Of a stretch of DNA of 64,000 nucleotides, positions 45,201 to 54,574 are shown piece after piece; the stretch's first letter is position 1; every line of letters starts with the position of its first letter. The translations under genes were made by a program, and so were the position numbers. Under the pieces are notes generated by a model. The model was not told the DNA's origin. It saw nothing but the letters and a program-made list of their open reading frames with translations, and searched no databases. The stretch is from Orbicella franksi. Taxonomy: Eukaryota. Location of the stretch: the NCBI GenBank assembly GCA_964199315.1, contig OZ116709.1:2666001-2730000 (forward strand), given 5' to 3'.

Positions 45201-48200
45201 ACTTACATTTATTCAACAGCTCCCATTAAACCCAGAGCCCGGCCCAGAATTCGGCCTCGAATTCGTCCCAGGCTTCCGCTTCGTCCCAGGCCCCGGCCAG
45301 TAAAACTACCTTTACCAAGGCCAAGAAAACCAGGTTTGTTAAAAATTTCATTTCAGATTAAAAAAATGTCGTATACTTGATGAAAGAAGATGGTGACTTT
45401 TTTAACGATCATGTATGGCTGTTATCAAGACTGTAAGCTCTATGAATCAGCCATCTATCTTGTTTTCAATTTTTTCTAGTCCAGTAAACGTTTAACAAGT
45501 TATTTTGAATTCACTTATTTTTAGGTGTACAAATAAGACCCAGGCTTCGACCAAAGCCGCGACCAGGTATAACAGTGTTGGTTTTTTTGGGTTTATTTTA
45601 CCTTATTATCGGACTCTTGTGTTGACTACTTTGGTGAAAGTGCATACTCTGTTTCTTTAGGAGCAAAATACAGATTCTTTGGACGCTATCGTGCTCCACC
45701 CAAAAAGATACTTGGCAGCCCAACAGTGACGTTCAGAAGTCTGAAGTTTGCAAGAAAGAACTGCCAGCGAGTAGCGCGCATGCGCCGTGCCTGGGCCTTC
45801 GCTTTGCGATTTGGTCGTCAGTGTTACATCGCTCAAAAAAGTCCGCGCAAGTTTACAAAGTTCGGTTTTCCTCGAACGAAAATGCCTGGAGCACTGAAGG
45901 TTTATATCGCTAAAGGTAAATAGGAGACTGGTGTGTTGGGCGCCTTAAAGCATAATAAGAACTTCATAGAAACTATTGAATTATTTGTTTTACTTACTGT
46001 ATGGCGTTATATTAACCCGCACCTAGCCCCATTCATTTCATTGGAGTTATGCATTTCCTTGTCCCTGGGAGTTATATCAGCAGTGATTTGAGGTCCGTCA
46101 CTTGATTTGAAAAAGCATTTCATTTGTGGGGTACAATAACTGGTTTTATTTACAAATTCTTCGTGGCTTTGTTTTTGTTGCCATTGTTATGTGCAGATAT
46201 AAGGTGATATCTGTGTTGTTTTCCAGGAGGTCGTTCCATACCAATAATAAGACCCAGGCCTCGACCCAGACCAAGGCCTTTCCCCCGTCCGAGGCCCCGA
46301 CCGAGACCAGGTAGAGAAACAGTTTCTTGTTAGTTATATCTGCGCTTGTGAAAATTATGCTCTCAAAACAATACAGGTAACCTTTAGAAGTACTTGAGAT
46401 GGAGTGTAATGGATAATGTTTTGAAAGGCAGACCAAAACTCCCCAAGTGCTGGTACAGGCTGCAAACAGTGACATATTTCAGGAAGTTGAGCGAGCAAGA
46501 AGCATGAGATTTCAAGAGCTGGCTCTATTATTTGATATGGAAAATCTTCTTACGGTCCAAAGATATTCTGTGTTTTGAATCATACACTCATTTTGCACTT
46601 ATAATGTTTTCAACTATTCTCTGTTTAAATGCTGTAGTCAATTTACTTAGAGGTAATTAATTTAAATTCATTTTAACATTGTACCTTTTTATAATCTCAC
46701 TGTATATTATTTTTAGAGTGTTTATTGTAGCAAGGGTATTTTGTAAATAATGTTATCCCAATAATTAATTCATTTGTAATTAATTTTCACGACCCCACAA
46801 GCTTTGAGCTTTAAATCTTATCGTGTTTAAATAAAGAATACGTACGTATGTATGTATACTTCATATTGTTCCTTCTCTCACTACACTAAGTGATCCATTT
46901 ACAATGCGAGCAAAACTAAACAGTAGTTTGTTTATGCTTGTTTGTCTCAGGACGCAAAACGTACAGGTACAGCGGACTCTACCGACCACCACCAAAGAGA
47001 ATGCTGGGAAGTCCTATTAGGAAATTTAGAAGCCGACTTTTCGCACGCAGACGGTGTGAAAAAATAGCAAGATCAGGCAGATATCGAGCATACGCCTTAC
47101 AATATGGCCGTTACTGTTATGTTGCTCGGTTAACAAGTAGAAAGTTTACCAGATATGGACGCAGCGTATCCAGGAGACCCAGTGCTCTTAAAGTCTTCAT
47201 AAGAACCAGTGGTACGTTTTCCAACAAATACTATGTGGGGCTTACTTTGTAACTAGAACGTTAAGGATTGCCAGAGAGATTTACTAGAATAAGATTTTAT
47301 CAAAAGAGACGACCGAGCAAAATTGGTGTACAGCTTTACAGACCACTATGGAAGCTAACATTGTTTACAAAATCCATTTGCTCAACTGAGCAATTTTGCA
47401 ACAAGGCCAACCTTTAAAACTAAGCTGTCACAGATTAAGACCCCATGAGCAGCTTAAAACGAGGAAAATATCACTTTTTACATTCTAAGTGTTATAGTTT
47501 ATCTCCTGGCTGATTCAATACTGCCGCAAACTTGAGCAACGTCTTACACTGACCGTTTTCAGTTAGCAACTAGTAGCTATTTTGCTGGTTCTAATGCTGT
47601 ACATTAACTTGTGCATCTGTTATCTTTGTATTTAGGAGGCATTCTCAGACCTAGACCTCGAATCAGACCTCGACCTCGAATAAGGCCTCGACCCAGAATT
47701 CGACCCAGACCTCGAATCAGACCTCGACCTCGAATAAGACCTCGACCTCGAATCAGACCTCGACCCAGAATTCGACCCAGACCTCGAATCAGACCTCGTC
47801 CAAGGCCTCGGTTACCAGGTATTTTTTGTCTTCTGCAACCTTGGCAGGTCAAACATGGAAACCTAAACAGATTCGTTTTTTCCTTCTCTTAGGAAGAAGA
47901 AGAGTTGTCCGCAAATATCTTGGAAGCTTCCGAGCTCCACCGAGACTGGGACGACCAGTGCGCACCTTCAGACGTCGAACATACGTTGTGCGCTCGTGTT
48001 TCCGTTTAGCCCGAGCGCAAAGGGCAAGAGCTTTTGCCATCCGAACAGGACAACGAGGAGTCAAGTGTTACTTGTCGAAAATGACTTCGGTTAAGTTTAC
48101 AAGACTCGGCAAAACTCGATTTGGAGGCCTTAAGGTTTACGTTTTGAGAAGAGGTAATTTACCAACATTTAATGTGTCAGCTAAAACAGTTTCTACGTTA

Positions 48201-50438
48201 AAACAAATAACGTTTCCATCAAGTTTACACGCCCCTTACTGACTGTTCGACTTCTTTAGCCGGGTACACTCGGACTGAATGAAAATTATTCACAGATTGC
48301 AGCGAAAATAAAAAAATTGAACTTTATTTCAATATCAAATGCTCCATTGCACTAAGACAATTGAAGTTGAAATTTTCCACGATTTCTACAACGAAATACG
48401 TTTTCGTTTTCGTTGTATAATGGTCTCGGTTATCTTCTTTAAGGTTTTTTAAAGTTTACATCACTCGTCTTGCTAGCATGGTCATATCTACTAAGCCTGT
48501 GGAACTGGGTCCCCTATTGTAACCTAGCTCACTAAGCCAAAGTAAGAAAAAAAGACTTCTGTTGTAGGCAGGAGCCCGTGGCCCGGAGCCTCCATATGTA
48601 TTACACCCTTGAGTCAACATGGGCTCCTGTTATATGTAATGAATAAGCTATGAAGTGCGTAGTTAACAGACTATCCCTCAATATCTCCTAATTCAGGCTC
48701 ACCAAGACCAAGAATAACACCCCGAGTGAGACCACGAATCAGGCCTCGCCCCAGACCTTCACGTCGCGTATGGAACTATCGTCGCCTTGGTACTTATAGA
48801 GTTCCACGTGGCCGTTCTTCCCCAGGGCGCAGATACTTAGGTACGGTCAAACCAAGAATAAATCCCACCAAACAGTGCGCTCTCACGGCGCGGAAGAGAC
48901 GCTACCGCTTCTTTGGTGTACGAAGTAGACGCTACTGTTACGGAGCAAGAATTCGGATACCGCTGACCAGATTTGGCCGAACAACTGGTCTTAGTGGAAT
49001 GGCTGTTTACAAGATCGGAAGAGGTAAGTCTAAAATACTGGAGTTCCACGTGTAGATTTTTGACGTGACGAGACGTGGTCGTAATTTGTTTCAATTGAAT
49101 TTTCATGCTTCCCAGGTCCCCTTAGACCAAGACCGAGAGTGGCAGGCTGGCACTACCGCTATGTAGGCCGCTTCAAATCACTCGCCCCCAAGCGCTTGGG
49201 CCGGTTTGTTGGGCGGATAACGGGAACTAAGAAAGTGTTTAAATGTGCGCGCACTGCTAGGAAGATGGGTTTCCGCGCGTTTGCTTTGCGTAACCGAGGA
49301 GATTGTTACGTGTCGAGATATTCATCAACTTACTCCACTAAAAAGCGTTTGTTTGGACGCTTCAGAGGAATTTCTGGTACACCACGTGCCATAGATGCTT
49401 ATGTGATCGGAAAAGGTAAGACAGATATAGTGTGGTTAAGATATTTCTAGTAAAGAGCACGGATAAGTGTCATTCTGGCAAAACTTCGTTTGGTCTTCCA
49501 CGAGTTTCTAATTTGTTTTTGATAACAAAAAAAAAAAACTGCGGACACTAAAGAATACTCTAATTAGACATGGCACCGTGACAGCTCGTCCTGCTGCTTA
49601 GCAACTCTGGTGACAAAACAAACACGGGTCCTGTCGTGCCTGCTGTCGTCCATTCTCCAAAATGAGATTTTGTTTTTCACTAGTAGAAACTGGCTCCACC
49701 GACTGCAACGCGTACAGTCTGTTCAGAAATAGACCGAAGACAATACGTAGCGACCAATATTTTCACAGAACATGTCAGAAAACATAGTCTACAACGCTTT
49801 TTCAGAAAGTTGTAAGAACTGTTCAGCCTTGTTATATTTGTTAAGTGTTTTTCAAAGCGTGCCATTCAACTCAATTGTTAGTCAATCAACTTAAAATTAT
49901 CCCAGTCGTGGCCCAAGGCAAAGTGAAGCGAATATCCCTAATTAATACATTTTGAACGTAGTGGAATCGCTTTAGTTGACTATCACTCTTGAAAATAAAA
50001 CTGTTATTTGTTTCTTTCCAAGGTCGTTTTAAGCCTCCCCCCAGACCTCGTAAAGGAGGTTCTGTTTGGCATTACCGCTGGCTTGGACGTTTCCGGTCAC
50101 TAAAAGCACGAGGTCTGGGAAGGAGATTAGGCAGAGTGACAGGGCGAAAGAAAGTGTTCAGCTGTGCTATGCTGGCAAAACGCAATGGTTATAAAGCATT
50201 CGCTTTGCGCCGACGCGGTATCTGTTATGGGACTCGTTCATCTAGAGCTTACACATCCAAGCCAGTTATCAAGGGCCGCTTTAGAGCTGGTGCAGGAGGA
50301 GGACGATTCATTGATACTTACATAATAGGGCGAGGTATGTCATGCTAGTATTTTAGCTGATGTAAAAATTTCACAGGAACGAACAGTTCAAAAAACAGTT
50401 GTGGAGCGCAGTCAATACCAACTTAGAAATTTGCAGTG

Positions 50439-50484
<46 letters not shown>

Positions 50485-53400
50485 GATAAATGTCAACAAG
50501 ACGACTTTTTCGTTTCTTGGTTTTCTGTCAAGCTATTTACTGTTAGAATACAGTTTAGGCTGGATATTTGTACACTGAGATGTGTTAGTCTTATTTCAAT
50601 GCTTCGTTAATTATCAGAACACGTTCACTTGATGTTGTCGTCAATTTATTCCGTACATACGTTTTCTTCTAGGTCATTACAGACGGCCATTACGAAAAGG
50701 CAAGTACTATATTTGAAGGTTCATTTTCAATCAGGTTTTGTATCTGTATCAAAAGATTCCAAAGATTTGTCAATCTTTGGCTTTTTAGGCTTTTGTGCAT
50801 ATAGAAAGAAAACAAACCAAAAACTTCAAATTGCTACAATCCCGGTTGATAAATCGAAAATTTAATTGTTATATGAAGTGTCAACTAAATGGACACTGAA
50901 TTTTTACCATAGGTGCGGACGTGTGGTATATGTTCAACTGAAACTAAAATCAGTAGTGACACATAACGTATATGAAATAAGTCAACATGTGAACTGCAGG
51001 CGACATAGAAACGGGTTAGGAAAAGAGTTCAATTCCCGACGGGATTCGAGCCTACGACCTTTGAAATTTCTGGTGCAAAAGCTCTACATAGCTATGAAAC
51101 TGCGGAGGCTCAATCACCACTACAAAACCAAGACATCCTTATTTGATCTAATTTAATTTTCTTTCTAAAGGAGTTAGAGGTCGCTCTAGAAAAACAAGGC
51201 AACGAAGAAGAAAGATGATAAGAGCAGTTAGAAGAAAGGTCAGAAGAATTAAACGAAAGAGGGCACGGATAGCAAAAACTAGAACACTAGAAAGAAGGAT
51301 AAAAACACGTGTTAGACGACTAAGAGGTCTGAGGAGGAAGGCTGTGCGAACTGCGCAACGGGTAAGGAGTTTGAGACGATTAAGGAAACTTAGACTACTG
51401 CGACTGGCAAGAAAAGCGAAACTTGCTTTGACCAGGAGAATACGGCAGATGAAGAGGAGAATCCGTGCACGGAAATTACGGCTAAGGCGACAGTTACAAC
51501 GCGTGCGAGCAGCAAGACGTCGGGCGAGAATACGACGAGCAAGAAGAAGAGCTATGCAGCTGTTGAAATTGCGAATGAGAAGGCGTTTGCAAAGACTGCG
51601 ACTGTTGGCTCAACAGAGGAGGGCGCGTGCACTCAGAATGGCCAGGTTACAACGTTTGAGACGGTATCGAATGTTGGCCAGGTTACAAGCGAGGCAGAGA
51701 GCACAGAGGAGACGAATGATGTCGCAAATCAGACGAAGAATGCTTCTTATGCGACGGAAATTAGCTCTGAAGCAAAGAGCTCTTAGAGCTCGATTCCAAA
51801 GTAGACGACAGAGGGCTGCGCGGTTACGACTCCTGTCATATAGAATAAGGGTTCGTCAAAGAAGAATGAGCAGTCAGCTGTCACAAATCAGGAGAGGGCT
51901 GATAGCCTTATCAAAAAGAATGGTGTATTACAGGCGTTTGAGGCGTTACAAACTCCTGGCAAGACTGCGAGTTTACAGGCAACAGCAGATGAAAAGAGCG
52001 AGCATGGTTCGAGTCAGGTGGTTCAGATATCAAAAGCAGTTAGCGGCCATCAGAACCAAACAAAGAATGCTAGCGCTGAGGCAACGACGTGCTCTTCAGA
52101 AGTTTCAGGCATTTCAAAGAAACAGAAGATTGATGTTCATGCAACAACAGCAGAAACTCAGAAAATTATTGCAGACGATGAATTCACGTCGAGTTCGAGG
52201 TGAGTGAGTTTAATTGAAATTCTTTGATTGAGATTACGCTGTTTATAATGCTTTGTGGGTGTTGATGTGGTGGGGTCGCTTATTGGAATGAGGACCGAGT
52301 TGGAATAGAATCCAGCCTTGCTAAACGCGAATCTATCCGCGAGTGCTTTAAGTATTTCCACAAAAAAGACGAAATTCGTCAAAAAAAAAAATTGTGAATC
52401 ACGTTTGAACCATTCTACGACGGCCACATGGAAATGAACAAGTCATTGTACAGAGACGCTATCCAGTGAACTGTTAACTAAAATTGTGCTTAACATTTCA
52501 ATGCAGCTGGGAAGAAGCGAGGAGATATTCTAAACAAGGAGCTAAAGAGGAAGAATTCATCCAAACAGATAAAAAGAGGACCTAACACTGGTAAGAAGGT
52601 GGTTAAAAATTTTTTGAGAAGTAAATCTCTGTGATCAGTTATTAAACAGACGCACGGTAACATGGAATCTATCTGTTTCATATAATTAAAAAAACGATAT
52701 AAAATATAAATGACGTCATCTAGATATATACGTTTATCCTCTGATTGCTCATAAGTAAGAACCAATCAAAATGCGAGAATAATTTGACTTATCGTGTATA
52801 TTATATAAAACTCGTTTGACCGGTATGACCATGACATCTGATTGGTTCACAGCCAAGCTTATCTTCTCTCGCTTGATAAGCCCGACACCACCCTGAAGGT
52901 TGGGCGGTCAGTTAACCCCGCTACAATATACACATCTCTTTTTAACACTTATGTAATATTCGATGATAAAAGTCTTAAAACAATACCACGCATGCATAAC
53001 CAATTATTCTCCCACAAAATCTCTCGTTTACCAAAATGACATGCATCTCATTAAACTAGTTTTGGATTGACAAGTCATTATTTCAGTGCTTATCACTTCA
53101 TGTAAAACCAAGTGATCTAGTTATCCGAGATGTGCTGCTATTGTGGATTAAATTAAAGTTCTATGTGGCTCGATTTTCGGTTTACCCTTCAAAGCACGTT
53201 ATTATGGAAGACTATAAATGGAATTTTCCCAACATTTCGTTTTCAGTTCCAAAAGAGTTCCATTCAGCAGATTACTTCTGGTCGTTTGAAGACTCTGAAG
53301 GTAATCAATCCGATGATGCTGTTCGGAAGCGTGCAGCGAAGCTTATGGGAGGATCGCTTGTTGTTGCGACAAGTGATCGAGGTCACGTGGCAGACACTGG

Positions 53401-54574
53401 TAAACCCAGAGGTTGGATCTCCCTTGGAGACTTTAAAGGTGATAAGAGTCAAATATTTTCGTTCGCGCGCGATTGGTCTAAAACGCGACACGTAACTGAC
53501 TATTACCCGACTAAAACTTGGGGATGTCCGAGTGATATTCCCCAGTTGTCAAAACTGCGTGTGTTGCGAAAAATATTTGAAAGATGAATAAGGAAATCTT
53601 GGTGGTGAAAACACGATGAGGTTCTCACCGTCTTGACTGATGTTTTTTCTCAACAGGAAAGTGCTTCAGCGACCCGGATCGGTGTAGAGATCAAGGAATG
53701 ACAGTAATGGCGTCCCTGAAACTGGATAAGGAATATTTCCATAAGAAATCTAGCACCTACTTCCTATCAAGCGGAGGTCAAACTACCAAGGCTCGAGGAT
53801 TTGCTTTCCTGCATCTTCTCGGCCGCTACATCGTAATACTCAGCACAAAAGACAAACAATGGACACTGGAAGCTCGAGATCTTCCAGAAGGATGGGCCAA
53901 CGTAGCCATTACTTGGAAAAAGGCCGGTTTACTGAAGATGTATGTAAATGGAAAGGAAGTGGCCAGTGGAGAAGCTATGAGTGTTTCAAGGCCAAAGGAT
54001 CAGTACTCGAGCTTTGAAGTTGGGCGGCCGAATAATTCTCACTCACCAAACTTTAGAGTGCCTTTAGAAATAGACAACATTGCTCTCTGGGAAAAAGCTC
54101 TCGCAAGCAAGGAAATTAGCGCATTGGCCAAGAAAGGTATTGAAAATTTAAGTGGACTATAGCTTTCCTTTTTTTCTAAATTACCTTTGACAAAAATTGA
54201 AAACAAGCAGTGAAAGGAGCTGATTACCGAAAAACGGCAATGACTAAGCATAATTAAATACGCATTTTATGAATGGTCTGGGATGAAAAATGAAAACTGG
54301 ATTCCATTCTTAGCCATGTTCGATCAGCTTTAAGGTTACCACTTATGTAACATAGAAATTGTCTGAAGTCTTTCACAATCGACACTTACTCATATATTCA
54401 TATTTTACAATAGCTTTATGTTTTTTTCATTTCTTTGCTTCTTTTTATTTTCAAAATATCACTCATCTTTTCTATATCTGTTATACATAAATAGCTTGAC
54501 TTTGCTAATAAACTCACTCTATCTTCCATTTAGATTTAACGAGAGCGTCCAAACAAGAGGCAATTAAAGAATAA
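11957..54574 (+). CDS. Giant secreted multi-block protein (about 6,157 aa, 60 coding exons): acidic region, vWA, (GGP)n, vWA, 9x LamG-like, 2x vWA, 7x Arg-rich WSC-like, Arg-rich helix, LamG/pentraxin-like
   Basis: Signal peptide [21 protein letters not shown]. Manual exons: 11957-13181, 13528-13599, 13819-14571, 14971-14991, 15249-15444, 15851-16215, 16593-16673, 16762-16923, 17028-17288, 17737-18414, 19376-19738, 21460-21822, 22368-22709, 23158-23874, 24948-25565, 25727-25825, 26661-27191, 27801-27848, 28114-28743, 29128-29169, 29729-30358, 31043-31093, 31267-31905, 32471-32503, 32584-33059, 33328-33493, 33905-33937, 34091-34720, 35324-35386, 35947-36585, 36864-36920, 37097-37747, 38312-38356, 38777-39415, 39761-39820, 40023-40655, 41045-41086, 41483-41654, 42320-42675, 42952-42984, 43140-43169, 43440-43967, 44482-44526, 44669-44932, 45220-45333, 45525-45566, 45661-45915, 46227-46310, 46951-47211, 47636-47818, 47893-48153, 48697-49023, 49116-49415, 50023-50334, 50673-50699, 51171-52199, 52507-52590, 53247-53438, 53657-54136, 54534-54574. 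Sum 18,474 nt, phases compatible throughout, ends TAA overlapping AATAAA. Only one signal peptide was found in the span. It could still be more than one transcript. Confidence 0.8.
15249..16215 (+). other. Module: vWA domain 1 with intact MIDAS
   Basis: [16 protein letters not shown]...ARTGRAL...VVITDGRS...IFSVGVG...KAIC; two exons joined by a phase-2 intron. Confidence 0.9.
18818..19104 (+). mobile_element. tRNA-derived SINE
   Basis: Head GGCGACGTGGCCGAATGGTT...GGTTCGAGCCC (A/B-box-like), body GTTGTGTTCTTGAGTACGACAC...GTGTGTAAATGGGTACC...CTTCATGCTACTGAAAC, tail GACTTTACCTTAC. Intronic. Confidence 0.75.
20494..20697 (+). mobile_element. Probable non-LTR retrotransposon 3' ORF fragment containing a 69-bp tandem duplication
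   Basis: Peptide [23 protein letters not shown] occurs twice (units start at 20504 and 20573), followed by [15 protein letters not shown]. Intronic; the LINE assignment is by resemblance only. Confidence 0.4.
21093..21283. repeat. Palindromic element
   Basis: AAACAATAGCCTCCA...AAAATATGCTCGGATAT...TTGTCC...CATTATC mirrored by GATAATG...GGACAAATATCCGAGCATATTTT...TGGAGGCTATTGTGTTT. Confidence 0.75.
26345..26533. mobile_element. MITE with GGCC termini flanked by TAA (PIF/Harbinger-like by end structure)
   Basis: Left TAAGGCCCTGGTCAAACGTCGAACTTC...TGAGACGAAC; right GTTCGTCTCA...GAAGTCTGACGTTTCTACCTGGGCCTAA. Confidence 0.6.
26661..27191 (+). other. Module: vWA domain 2 (degenerate MIDAS)
   Basis: [16 protein letters not shown]...DVRIGLV...KTGKAL...ILLTVGKS...IFSIGV...KAC; single exon. 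Confidence 0.88.
30861..30974. repeat. Palindromic element
   Basis: AACAATTATTCCAT...TTGGATATGAAGTGAT..TAACCAAC mirrored by GTTGGTTA..ATCACTTCATATCCAA...ATGGAATAATTGTT. Confidence 0.8.
35745..35817 (+). tRNA. tRNA-Lys(CTT), intronic; two stem mismatches, possibly a pseudogene
   Basis: GCCCGGCTAGCTCAGTCGGTAGAGCATGAGACT-CTT-AATCTCAGGGTCGTGGGTTCGAGCCCAACGTTGCGCG, 73 nt, followed by TTTTT. One C:C mismatch in the acceptor stem and one in the T stem. Confidence 0.85.
36687..36718 (+). pseudogene. Isolated 3' half of tRNA-Lys(CTT)
   Basis: CAGGGTCGTGGGTTCGAGCCCCACGTTGGGCG followed by AA and a T11 run; no 5' half upstream. Confidence 0.8.
41483..43967 (+). other. Module: vWA domains 3 (41483-42675) and 4 (43440-43967), both with degenerate MIDAS
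   Basis: [14 protein letters not shown]...ARIGLVSYS...RTGAAL...VITHD...KAC, and [15 protein letters not shown]...TRFGMVEFS...LGKAL...VVSVGIG...KAS. Confidence 0.87.
41885..42205. mobile_element. MITE inside the vWA3 intron
   Basis: Left AGGGAGTTTAAGAAAACGACGAC; right CGTCGCCGTCGTGATTACTTTAACTCCCT (imperfect inverted match). Confidence 0.65.
44238..44399. mobile_element. Tc1/mariner-like MITE (TACAGT...ACTGTA)
   Basis: Inverted ends TACAGTACAGCCCCTATTAA / TTAATAGGGGATCAACTGTA, with internal GGCCAC/GTGGCC repeats. Confidence 0.65.
44669..50334 (+). other. Module: seven Arg-rich two-Cys repeats (degenerate WSC-like) with Pro-Arg linker exons, about 800 aa
   Basis: Repeat exons at 44669, 45661, 46951, 47893, 48697, 49116 and 50023. 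Shared pattern YR..G.(Y/F)R...R.LG...C...AR....AFA.R....C(Y/F)......F...G.......V(Y/F). Confidence 0.8.
50443..50481 (+). repeat. (AG)n microsatellite
   Basis: About 19 AG units, intronic. Confidence 0.95.
51171..52199 (+). other. Module: 343-aa Arg-rich, Pro-free, predicted helical segment in a single exon
   Basis: Acceptor TTTCTAAAG at 51170 and donor GTGAGT at 52200. Roughly one third Arg, interspersed with L/M/I/A/Q; one Glu and no Asp. Confidence 0.85.
53247..54136 (+). other. Module: C-terminal LamG/pentraxin-like domain of a different subtype
   Basis: YFWSFE...[19 protein letters not shown]...SSGG...W.NVAITW...LKMYVNG...[11 protein letters not shown]; two exons. Confidence 0.75.

What the first reader, a model, noticed from the sequence alone, without database searches (positions are those of the whole stretch)
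51171..52590. Protamine-like 343-aa Arg-rich helix inside a secreted protein, followed by dibasic sites
Seen: roughly one third Arg, no Pro, no Asp and one Glu, with regularly spaced L/I/M/A and Gln rising toward the end. The next exon adds KKR, KRK and IKR before the terminal LamG. Inference: a rod of about 50 nm if fully helical, which would need a polyanion partner to fold or oligomerise. Candidate partners are the protein's own poly-Asp block, poly-gamma-glutamate (known from nematocyst matrix) or sulfated mucus glycans. Proteolysis would also yield cationic amphipathic peptides.
Basis: partly seen in the sequence, partly recalled or inferred. Interest (0 to 1): 0.7.

Follow-up and report, generated by a model that had tools for sequence, protein, structure and literature searches.

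The report
Conserved all-cationic helical rod in coral
A coral gene for a giant matrix-type protein has a real, expressed exon encoding about 340 residues of arginine-rich helix with almost no negative charges. Other corals keep it position for position, so it is probably a stiff positively charged rod that grips negatively charged polymers.

Summary
Exon 51171-52199 (+, 1029 nt, phase 1-1) encodes 343 codons: 35% Arg, 7% Lys, no Asp/Pro/Cys/His, one Glu, net +142.

One polyA RNA-seq contig splices it in frame. Upstream lie a basic Cys-containing module and a 27-nt micro-exon with a GC-AG intron. Downstream lie the 28-codon KKR/KRK/IKR exon and a two-exon terminal Laminin_G_3 domain.

It is not just low complexity:
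- Orthologues from at least three other coral lineages align without gaps over 332 residues, at 41-49% identity against 14-16% at wrong registers. One is a syntenic locus.
- Pro, Gly, acidic residues and stops are strongly excluded among accepted substitutions.
- Conserved columns recur every 3.6 residues.
- AlphaFold2 predicts three long helices (pLDDT 86).

So a helix is well supported. A single 50-nm rod is not settled, because the model folds back into hairpins of about 27 nm.

Hydrophobic spacing and amphipathicity do not exceed shuffled controls. That fails the "regularly spaced" and "amphipathic peptide" ideas. Nothing matches in Pfam, PDB or the ESM Atlas.

Best reading: a coral-restricted, fixed-length polycationic helical module that binds polyanions or acts as a spacer. 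The partner is untested.

The parts
50023..50334 (+). Exon for the last basic, Cys-containing module upstream. Net charge is about +31.
   Evidence: RNA contig X1 record 2 covers 50124-50334 and joins it onward. The acceptor at 50022/50023 is inferred from sequence. The exon is 312 nt, phase 1-1. Pfam finds no family. It is 80% and 73% identical to the orthologues in L003 and L002.
50673..50699 (+). A 27-nt micro-exon of 9 codons, basic, followed by a GC-AG intron.
   Evidence: 25 to 27 letters of X1 record 2 lie between the two large exons. Of the cut positions the read allows, only this one gives an AG acceptor, and its donor reads AG|GCAAGT. The frame stays open.
51171..52199 (+). The Arg-rich exon: 343 codons, net +142. 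It is predicted to be helical almost throughout (helices at residues 6-70, 73-256 and 259-341 of the 342 whole codons).
   Evidence: composition. (contig piece 51167-52197, depth 15.6)..
51878..51967 (+). The most conserved block, residues L236-L265. It holds all nine columns that are invariant in the 5- and 6-sequence alignments (L236, L243, S247, M250, Y252, Y253, R254, R257, L265). The predicted helix break at 257-258 lies inside it.
   Evidence: Alignments A1 and A2. AlphaFold2 secondary structure. Hairpin-type structural matches span model residues about 175-334.
52507..52590 (+). A 28-codon basic linker exon with KKR, KRK and IKR. It also has an RGD at 52518-52526.
   Evidence: Joints 52199/52507 and 52590/53247 in X1 record 2. 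Translation. The orthologous 28-codon exon in L002 keeps [KR]KRG[DE]I but reads RGE where the window reads RGD.
53247..53438 (+). First exon of the terminal LamG-type domain.
   Evidence: Joints in X1 record 2. Open frame. 51% identical to L002.
53657..54162 (+). Second exon of the terminal LamG-type domain, with the stop codon at 54160-54162.
   Evidence: Pfam Laminin_G_3, E 9.7e-11. RNA contig reaches 54136. 64% identical to L002.

Best explanation
The exon encodes a coral-restricted protein module: an almost uninterrupted alpha-helical segment of fixed length that is polycationic on all sides.

Where it sits: near the C-terminus of a giant, otherwise basic, matrix- or mucus-type protein, between an array of basic Cys-containing modules and a terminal LamG domain.

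Shown here:
- It is transcribed and spliced in frame.
- It is single-copy.
- It is conserved position by position, without indels.
- It is under purifying selection that excludes helix breakers, acidic residues and stops.
- One helical face is conserved more than the other.

Inferred:
- It works as a stiff rod of high positive charge density: about 2.8 charges per nm if straight and 51 nm long, or about 27 nm long if folded back as hairpins.
- It holds the terminal LamG at a set distance.
- It binds extended polyanions electrostatically. Candidates are sulfated glycans of mucus or matrix, acidic matrix proteins, and the protein's own two Asp/Glu-rich N-terminal blocks.
- The conserved face would be the contact or packing surface.
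- At seawater ionic strength, charge repulsion is largely screened. A polyanion may therefore not be needed for folding (general physical chemistry, not tested).
For: Expression and structure of the transcript:
- Spliced in frame in one polyA RNA-seq contig of 2089 nt and depth 15.6.
- Parts of the exon are held by RNA runs of six studies.
- Every exon whose two ends are placed here (four by the RNA contig, one with an inferred acceptor) is phase 1-1, as is usual for shuffled extracellular modules.
- Single copy in the 497-Mb genome.

Conservation:
- The orthologous locus L002 keeps the order VWA, basic module, R-rich ORF, LamG, two SUEL lectins.
- Gapless alignment over 332 residues: 49% and 41% identity, against 16.4 +/- 2.2% and 13.8 +/- 1.9% at wrong offsets.
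- All-basic columns 82 against 21 +/- 4 expected. All-hydrophobic columns 99 against 22 +/- 4. Identical columns 105 against 10 +/- 3.
- R+K stays at 38-42%, with Arg and Lys exchanging freely. Pro is 0 in all three sequences and D+E is 1-5.
- Among 298 derived residues: Pro 0 against 18.5 expected from the mutational spectrum (P 9e-9), Gly 4.7 against 21.8, acidic 7.7 against 18.2, stops 0 against 24. R, K, Q, L, M and A are enriched.
- dN is 0.39-0.52, against 0.15-0.23 in the flanking domains, with dS saturated (about 1.7-2.7). The exon is therefore constrained, but less so than the globular modules.

Helix:
- Conservation is periodic at 3.6 residues (p 0.0002 at 3.6, none at 3.5). In sliding windows z is 5-7.
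- AlphaFold2 gives pLDDT 86 and 97% helix.

Charge context:
- The rest of the protein downstream of the acidic N-terminus is basic too: each LamG +23 to +41, the basic modules +23 to +33. The two acidic N-terminal ORFs carry -73 and -45.
Against: - No partner or binding was tested.
- About 31% of residues are L/I/M/V/F/Y/W. That is too hydrophobic for a solitary solvent-exposed helix and favours helix-helix packing, which is the rival reading.
- The AlphaFold2 model is not one straight rod.
- Splicing evidence comes from one contig of one run. Two deep polyA raw-read runs showed no reads on the gene.
- Continuity with the signal-peptide exon at 11957 is inferred only. It rests on strand, domain types, and the fact that the 5' exon is held by RNA runs of the same four studies and three of the same runs.
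- One orthologue (L003) has an in-frame TAA at codon 10 of the exon.
Confidence: 0.5

Rival explanations
1. It is a structural stalk made by helix-helix packing. Either it folds back on itself as antiparallel hairpins (helix 1 and helix 3 lying on the long central helix, giving a rod of about 27 nm), or it pairs with further copies. This would resemble the helical region that precedes LG domains in laminin alpha or the pentraxin domain in long pentraxins. The conserved face is then the packing interface, and the cationic surface is secondary.
For: - AlphaFold2 breaks the helix at 71-72 and 257-258.
- The model's residues about 175-334 superpose on solved antiparallel hairpins such as PspA, the p85 inter-SH2 domain and the Rad50 hook, with Z 11-12.
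- The orthologues have Gly-Asn or Asn at the two breaks.
- All nine invariant columns lie around the second break.
- Strongly hydrophobic residues make up 31%, close to the 2-in-7 of coiled coils.
- Heptad a/d occupancy is slightly above shuffles.
- One face is conserved.
Against: - The hydrophobic pattern has no significant 3.5 or 3.6 periodicity, globally or in windows (z 1-1.9).
- Globally, the periodicity of conservation is at 3.6-3.65 and not at 3.5.
- Packing helices that carry about +0.4 charge per residue and no acidic residues is electrostatically costly.
- Z values of 11-12 are within the range that long helices reach by chance, per the tool's own note. pTM is only 0.37.
Confidence: 0.27
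2. It is a precursor region that convertases cut in the secretory pathway into many short cationic peptides with antimicrobial or cell-penetrating action. The acidic N-terminal blocks would act as a neutralising pro-piece, as in eosinophil major basic protein or Hydra arminin (general knowledge).
For: - 48 dibasic pairs and 12 R-X-[KR]-R motifs in the exon.
- A [KR]KRG[DE]I site in the next exon is kept in L002.
- The acidic N-terminal ORFs carry -73 and -45, against +142 here.
Against: - The basic motifs are no more frequent than composition predicts: 12 against 16.9 +/- 3.4.
- There is no amphipathicity beyond shuffles.
- There are no repeated peptide units.
- Indel-free length conservation and helix-periodic conservation over 332 residues are not expected of a string of independent short peptides.
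Confidence: 0.1
3. It is a disordered low-complexity linker constrained only in composition (positive charge), with no defined structure.
For: - Extreme composition, no Pfam, PDB or Atlas match.
- It evolves two to three times faster than the flanking domains.
Against: - Register-specific identity lies about 14-15 SD above wrong offsets, and there are no indels.
- Class-specific column conservation.
- Pro and Gly are excluded.
- Conservation is periodic at 3.6 residues.
Confidence: 0.08
4. The exon belongs to a separate gene for a nuclear or nucleic-acid-binding protein and is not part of the extracellular protein.
For: The composition resembles nuclear basic proteins. An ATG at 51215 could start a 330-codon ORF.
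Against: - The RNA contig joins it in frame to the upstream module and to the LamG exons.
- The open frame begins only 19 nt before the acceptor.
- The orthologue P0002 has the basic module and the R-rich part in one ORF.
Confidence: 0.03

Closest known systems
ER/K single alpha-helix (SAH) domains, for example in myosin VI and X and caldesmon (general knowledge)
   Same: A long, highly charged, Pro- and Gly-free helix-forming segment that serves as a rigid spacer of set length.
   Different: SAH domains are zwitterionic, stabilised by Glu to Lys/Arg i,i+4 salt bridges, and poor in hydrophobic residues. This segment has 1 Glu, 0 Asp, net +142 and 31% strongly hydrophobic residues. SAH domains are also intracellular.
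Protamines and histone H1 C-terminal tails (general knowledge)
   Same: Arg/Lys-rich polycations that neutralise a polyanion. H1 tails gain helix on binding.
   Different: They are 30 to about 100 residues long, nuclear, bind DNA, and are rich in Pro, Ser or Ala with few large hydrophobic residues. No sequence relation was found. Here the segment has 343 residues, lies inside a modular extracellular-type protein, and is conserved position by position.
Helical stalk followed by a C-terminal concanavalin-like domain: laminin alpha chains (coiled coil then LG domains) and the long pentraxins PTX3 and NPTX (general knowledge)
   Same: The order of parts: a long helical region, a short linker, then a terminal LamG/pentraxin-fold domain.
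   Different: Those stalks are heptad coiled coils of mixed charge that oligomerise. Here no heptad signal was found, there are no acidic residues, and there is no sequence similarity.
Acidic pro-piece paired with a strongly basic mature part: eosinophil proMBP, alpha-defensins, Hydra arminin and periculin (general knowledge)
   Same: One secreted polypeptide has an N-terminal polyanionic block (-73 and -45 here) and a C-terminal polycationic part (+142 in this exon).
   Different: In those proteins the basic part is small and globular or a short peptide. Here the whole C-terminal two thirds of a giant protein is basic, so the acidic blocks cannot neutralise it all.
Polycation/polyanion marine adhesives: sandcastle-worm cement proteins and mussel foot proteins (general knowledge; reviews PMC11277488 and PMC12817120 were listed but not read in detail)
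   Same: Secreted polybasic proteins that work against polyanions in seawater.
   Different: Those are Lys/Gly/Tyr(DOPA)-rich, disordered and repetitive. This segment is helical and non-repetitive, and no adhesive role was tested.

Membership tests
Any curated protein family or solved structure | Significant sequence match to a Pfam model, a PDB chain or an ESM Atlas cluster | tested here: not met
   Pfam: 0 families. PDB profile search: 0 hits at E <= 1. Atlas: no usable hit. Among 1.84 billion cluster representatives there were only 4 credible hits, all unnamed ORFs, two of them shown here to lie in orthologous context (L002, L003).
Protamine / sperm nuclear basic proteins | A small stand-alone protein (tens of residues), Arg about 50% or more in clusters, few large hydrophobic residues | tested here: not met
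   343 codons inside a multi-exon transcript with LamG. Arg 35%, L/I/M/V/F/Y/W 31%.
ER/K single alpha-helix | Alternating acidic and basic residues at i,i+4 and low hydrophobic content | tested here: not met
   D 0 and E 1 of 342 residues. Orthologues have D+E 3-5. Hydrophobic content 31-41%.
Canonical coiled coil | Heptad (3.5-residue) periodicity of hydrophobic a/d positions | tested here: not met
   Power at 3.5 and at 7 is within shuffles. Windowed z is 1.0-1.4 on orthologue-averaged hydrophobicity. Best-register a/d occupancy is only slightly raised, z about 2.4.
Canonical coiled coil | Self-association | tested here: inconclusive
   The two-copy complex prediction gave no verdict. This is neither for nor against.
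Cationic amphipathic antimicrobial peptide precursor | Helical hydrophobic moment above that expected from composition | tested here: not met
   Mean hydrophobic moment at 100 degrees is 0.24-0.38 against 0.26-0.41 in shuffles (z -1.0 to -0.1). The maxima are also within shuffles.
Cationic amphipathic antimicrobial peptide precursor | Repeated peptide units separated by processing sites that are enriched over chance | tested here: not met
   No tandem or internal repeats. R-X-[KR]-R count is 12 against 16.9 +/- 3.4 expected.
Alpha-helical rod (generic structural class) | Exclusion of helix breakers, no indels, conservation periodic at about 3.6 residues, helix predicted | tested here: met
   Pro 0 against 18.5 expected and Gly 4.7 against 21.8. 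Gapless over 332 columns. Periodicity p 0.0002 at 3.6, windowed z 5-7. AlphaFold2 gives 97% helix, pLDDT 86.
Exon-shuffled extracellular module | Phase 1-1 exon flanked by extracellular-type domains in the same transcript | tested here: met
   Exons of 312, 27, 1029, 84 and 192 nt are all phase 1-1. Laminin_G_3 lies downstream, VWA upstream.
Exon-shuffled extracellular module | A signal peptide on the same transcript | not tested
   The candidate signal-peptide exon at 11957 lies 39 kb upstream. The sole support is that both exons are held by RNA runs of the same four studies.

The most novel reading that the evidence does not exclude
The segment is a charge-driven assembly switch. In the secretory pathway, the +142 helix is paired with the protein's own Asp/Glu blocks (together about -118) as a self-neutralised pro-form. 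Once the acidic part is removed, or swapped for sulfated mucus glycans or acidic skeletal-matrix proteins, the fixed-length cationic rod cross-links polyanions at a set spacing. That would make it a natural helical polycation acting as a ruler or coacervating cross-linker in coral mucus, adhesive or calcifying matrix. Standard tryptic proteomics would miss it, since only 4 of its 143 tryptic peptides have 7 or more residues.
Probability: 0.15. Interest if true: 0.75.

Novelty: new variant of a known kind. Interest (0 to 1): 0.55.

Why it matters
Long charged helices known so far are zwitterionic (ER/K) or heptad coiled coils. Known natural polycations are short, disordered or nuclear. This segment has about 340 residues, is extracellular by its context, and carries positive charge almost exclusively. 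Selection keeps its length, its helix-compatible residues and one helical face across coral lineages.

If it binds polyanions, it bears on how corals organise sulfated mucus, tissue-to-skeleton attachment or the acidic calcifying matrix. It would also give a natural template for stiff polycationic rods that work at seawater salt.

A practical point follows. Trypsin cuts it into pieces mostly of 1-3 residues, so published coral mucus and skeleton proteomes could not have seen this part.

Tried and rejected
- Homodimer prediction (two copies): no verdict, so it is not evidence either way.
- Pfam, PDB sequence profile and ESM Atlas: nothing.
- Foldseek against PDB: no match at E <= 0.001, only generic helical hairpins. 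The VIA-align second look gave Z 11-12, within the chance range for long helices.
- The search for homologous proteins with the alignment returned the same few ORFs plus one fragment.
- The JGI metagenome scan returned only a 100% identical copy of the same species.
- Raw-read runs X23 and X24 had no reads on the gene, only on an intronic repeat. Depth, strand and exon-skipping could therefore not be measured.
- dN/dS: dS is saturated (about 1.7-2.7, or undefined) and the methods disagree. Only the ranking of dN is used.
- The RGD in the linker exon was considered as an integrin site. It reads RGE in L002, so it is not conserved.
- Five literature searches found no description of such a domain: arginine-rich with coral skeletal matrix, with laminin G and VWA, with nematocyst, 'highly basic secreted', and coacervate adhesives in Cnidaria. 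The Acropora skeletal proteome paper PMC4890752 lists laminin G proteins of other architectures only.
- ARAGORN found no tRNA in the flanking introns.
- Word searches of earlier scan notes gave nothing relevant.
Full report
**1. What is there**

The + strand has an AG acceptor ending at 51170, preceded by a pyrimidine tract. A consensus donor (GAG|GTGAGT) follows at 52199/52200. The exon 51171-52199 is 1029 nt, or 343 codons in phase 1-1.

Its 342 whole codons give R 119 (34.8%), L 49, Q 35, A 34, K 24 and M 18. There is no D, P, C or H, one E, and the net charge is +142. Gln rises and Arg falls toward the 3' end.

The open frame starts only 19 nt before the acceptor. The other two + frames are full of stops. 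No minus-strand ORF of 60 codons or more lies within the exon; only one, at 52158-52427, clips its last 42 bases.

Tandem Repeats Finder sees no repeat in the exon. All six Arg codons are used. A protein self-comparison finds no internal repeat beyond shuffles. The composition is therefore not the product of recent slippage.

The next exon, 52507-52590, encodes 28 codons with KKR, KRK and IKR. After it, two exons encode a Laminin_G_3 domain ending at the stop at 54160-54162.

**2. Is it expressed and spliced?**

The organism is a stony coral: the runs that hold the exon are labelled coral metagenome or coded coral species. Parts of the exon are held by RNA runs of six studies.

I laid 48600-54500 on four runs. 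A 2089-nt contig of a polyA RNA-seq run (X1, depth 15.6) reads 50124-50334 | 50673-50699 | 51171-52199 | 52507-52590 | 53247-53438 | 53657-54136.

All joints are GT..AG except the one after the 27-nt micro-exon.

Joining these exons gives one open frame. It runs from the upstream basic Cys-containing module through the Arg-rich exon to the LamG stop. All of these exons are phase 1-1.

Limits:
- This is one contig of one run.
- A second run (X5) shows unspliced pieces that cover intron sequence.
- Two deep raw-read runs had no reads on the gene. Depth, strand and exon skipping remain unmeasured.
- The link to the putative signal-peptide exon at 11957 was not tested directly. That exon is held by RNA runs of the same four studies and by three of the same runs, which is weak support.

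**3. Is it conserved?**

The exon is single-copy in the 497-Mb genome. A search of 1.84 billion cluster representatives found four credible relatives, all unnamed ORFs from Logan or ENA assemblies, plus one weak, unrelated-looking hit.

P0002/P0013 lies on an 833-kb contig whose neighbours repeat the window's gene order: VWA, basic module, R-rich ORF, Laminin_G_3, two SUEL-lectin ORFs and a 268-codon ORF. That makes it an orthologous locus (L002). L003 is a second lineage. P0003, P0004 and P0020 are fragments of one or two more.

The three full-length sequences align without a single gap over 332 residues. Identity is 49% (L003) and 41% (L002). At all other gapless offsets it is 16.4 +/- 2.2% and 13.8 +/- 1.9%. 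The similarity is therefore positional and not only compositional.

Against shuffles, identical columns number 105 against 9.7 expected, all-basic columns 82 against 21, and all-hydrophobic columns 99 against 22.

R+K stays at 38-42% while Arg and Lys exchange (Arg is 35%, 31% and 23% in the three). Pro is absent from all three, and D+E is 1-5.

The flanking modules are more conserved. The basic module is 80% and 73% identical, and LamG is 64%. dN is 0.39-0.52 in the exon against 0.15-0.23 in the flanks. dS is saturated, so only this ranking is used.

The donor phase, and in L002 even the GGTGAGTGA context, are kept.

Caveats:
- L003 has an in-frame TAA at codon 10 of the exon, where the window has CAA. 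The remaining 333 codons are open.
- The L004 fragment matches in two frames and shows many Arg to Trp, Cys or His changes.

**4. Is it a helix, and what kind?**

I took the single-nucleotide non-synonymous neighbours of all codons as the mutational supply. The 298 derived residues in the alignment include:

| Residue class | Observed | Expected | P |
|---|---|---|---|
| Pro | 0 | 18.5 | 9e-9 |
| Gly | 4.7 | 21.8 | 4e-6 |
| Cys/Trp/His | 6 | 23.7 | 4e-6 |
| Acidic | 7.7 | 18.2 | 3e-3 |
| Stop | 0 | 24 | 4e-11 |

R, K, Q, L, M and A are over-represented. This is selection for helix-compatible, non-acidic residues.

Conserved columns recur with helical period:
- The globally coherent power at 3.6 residues has p = 0.0002, tested a priori. 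There is none at 3.5.
- As the maximum over the whole spectrum, the peak is only about the 95th percentile of shuffles.
- In sliding windows the signal is strong, z 5-7 at 3.5 to 3.67.
- Identity is 46% on the conserved face and 20% on the opposite face. Both faces mix Arg with Leu, Met or Ala.

AlphaFold2, with the six-sequence alignment, gives pLDDT 86 and helices at 6-70, 73-256 and 259-341, with pTM 0.37.

The hydrophobic pattern itself is not periodic. Global power at 3.5, 3.6 and 7 is within shuffles. The helical hydrophobic moment equals shuffles. Windowed z on orthologue-averaged hydrophobicity is only 1-1.9. The basic residues are spread evenly around the helix.

**5. One rod or folded back?**

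The two predicted breaks fall where the orthologues have Gly-Asn (window residues 71-72) and Asn (258-259). The second break lies inside the block that holds all nine invariant columns, L236 to L265.

Structural comparison shows that model residues about 175-334 superpose on solved antiparallel helical hairpins (PspA, the p85 inter-SH2 domain, the Rad50 hook). Residues about 24-156 superpose loosely on the Snf7 hairpin. Z is 11-12, which the tool itself rates as within the chance range for long helices.

With 31% strongly hydrophobic residues, a solitary exposed helix is less comfortable than a packed one. The segment may therefore be a rod of about 51 nm or a hairpin rod of about 27 nm. The present data do not decide. 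A two-copy complex prediction gave no verdict.

**6. How it most likely works**

Shown: a transcribed, conserved, indel-free, helix-constrained module whose positive charge is conserved as charge (Arg and Lys interchange) and whose acidic residues are selected against.

Its context is basic throughout. Each of the LamG repeats tested carries +23 to +41, and the basic modules +23 to +33. The two N-terminal Asp/Glu-rich ORFs carry -73 and -45.

Inferred: the module is a stiff element of high charge density, about 2.8 positive charges per nm if straight. It binds extended polyanions and sets the distance to the terminal LamG. The conserved face would be the contact or packing surface.

Which polyanion is unknown. 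Candidates are sulfated mucus or matrix glycans, acidic matrix proteins, the protein's own acidic blocks, or poly-gamma-glutamate. At seawater ionic strength, electrostatic repulsion within the helix is largely screened (general physical chemistry), so a partner may not be needed for folding.

Furin-type motifs are present but no more frequent than composition predicts (12 against 16.9 +/- 3.4). That neither supports nor excludes processing. The [KR]KRG[DE]I site in the linker exon is kept in L002 and is the best candidate for a cut that would free the LamG domain.

**7. Comparison with known things**

There is no match to Pfam, PDB or the ESM Atlas, and five literature searches found no description.

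- It works like a rigid charged helix of the ER/K SAH kind, but fails that family's defining acidic-basic alternation.
- It shares only composition with protamines.
- Its order of parts (helical region, linker, terminal ConA-fold domain) recalls laminin alpha and the long pentraxins, but it lacks their heptad pattern.
- The pairing of an acidic N-terminus with a basic body recalls acidic pro-pieces of cationic proteins.

I file it as a new variant of the helical-rod kind, so far seen only in stony corals.

**8. Verdict**

The single 50-nm rod and the polyanion partner remain open. Amphipathic peptides are not supported.
- Interest is moderate to fairly high. The feature is unusual and clearly selected, but its function is still inferred.

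Noticed in passing
window 50673-50699 and intron 50700-51170: A 27-nt micro-exon (9 basic codons) is followed by a rare GC-AG intron, with the donor context AG|GCAAGT. It is seen in one RNA contig.
   Followed up: partly
window 52518-52526: An RGD tripeptide sits at the start of the 28-codon linker exon. The orthologous exon in L002 reads RGE, so it is probably fortuitous or lineage-specific.
   Followed up: yes
window 47645-47798: An 18-nt (72-nt) tandem repeat encodes about nine copies of RPRPRI in one + frame. It is a Pro/Arg repeat just upstream of a basic module ORF and probably another polycationic linker of the same gene.
   Followed up: partly
window 52749-52792 and 53449-53482: Short intronic stretches have very high summed RNA contig depth (up to about 790) and many loose ends running into unrelated sequence. 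These are fragments of an interspersed repeat expressed elsewhere in the genome.
   Followed up: no
L003:1674-1703: The orthologous exon of another coral lineage has an in-frame TAA at codon 10, where the window has CAA. The following 333 codons are open. This could be a downstream acceptor, an assembly error or an early step of decay.
   Followed up: partly
L004:4024-4832 (P0003): This orthologous fragment from a Tara metagenome scaffold matches in two reading frames. It has many Arg to Trp, Cys, His or Gln changes of the CpG-transition type. It may be a pseudogene, a paralogue or an assembly error.
   Followed up: no
window 28179-50334: Every tested module downstream of the acidic N-terminus is strongly basic: LamG repeats +23 to +41, one VWA domain +24 and the Cys-containing modules +23 to +33. 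The two N-terminal ORFs carry -73 and -45. The whole protein is a polyanion head on a polycation body.
   Followed up: partly
window 50443-50481: An (AG)19.5 microsatellite lies in the intron after the last basic module. Reads appear to be cut there.
   Followed up: no
window 51020-51100, minus-strand sense: The sequence resembles a tRNA T-arm and acceptor end (GGTCGTAGGCTCGAATCCC in reverse complement), which suggests a tRNA-derived SINE fragment in the intron. ARAGORN calls no tRNA here.
   Followed up: partly
window 50604-50827 and 51090-51170: Run X5, a random-primed metatranscriptome, has contigs that cover intron sequence. It contains unspliced RNA or DNA and cannot be used as splicing evidence.
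   Followed up: no
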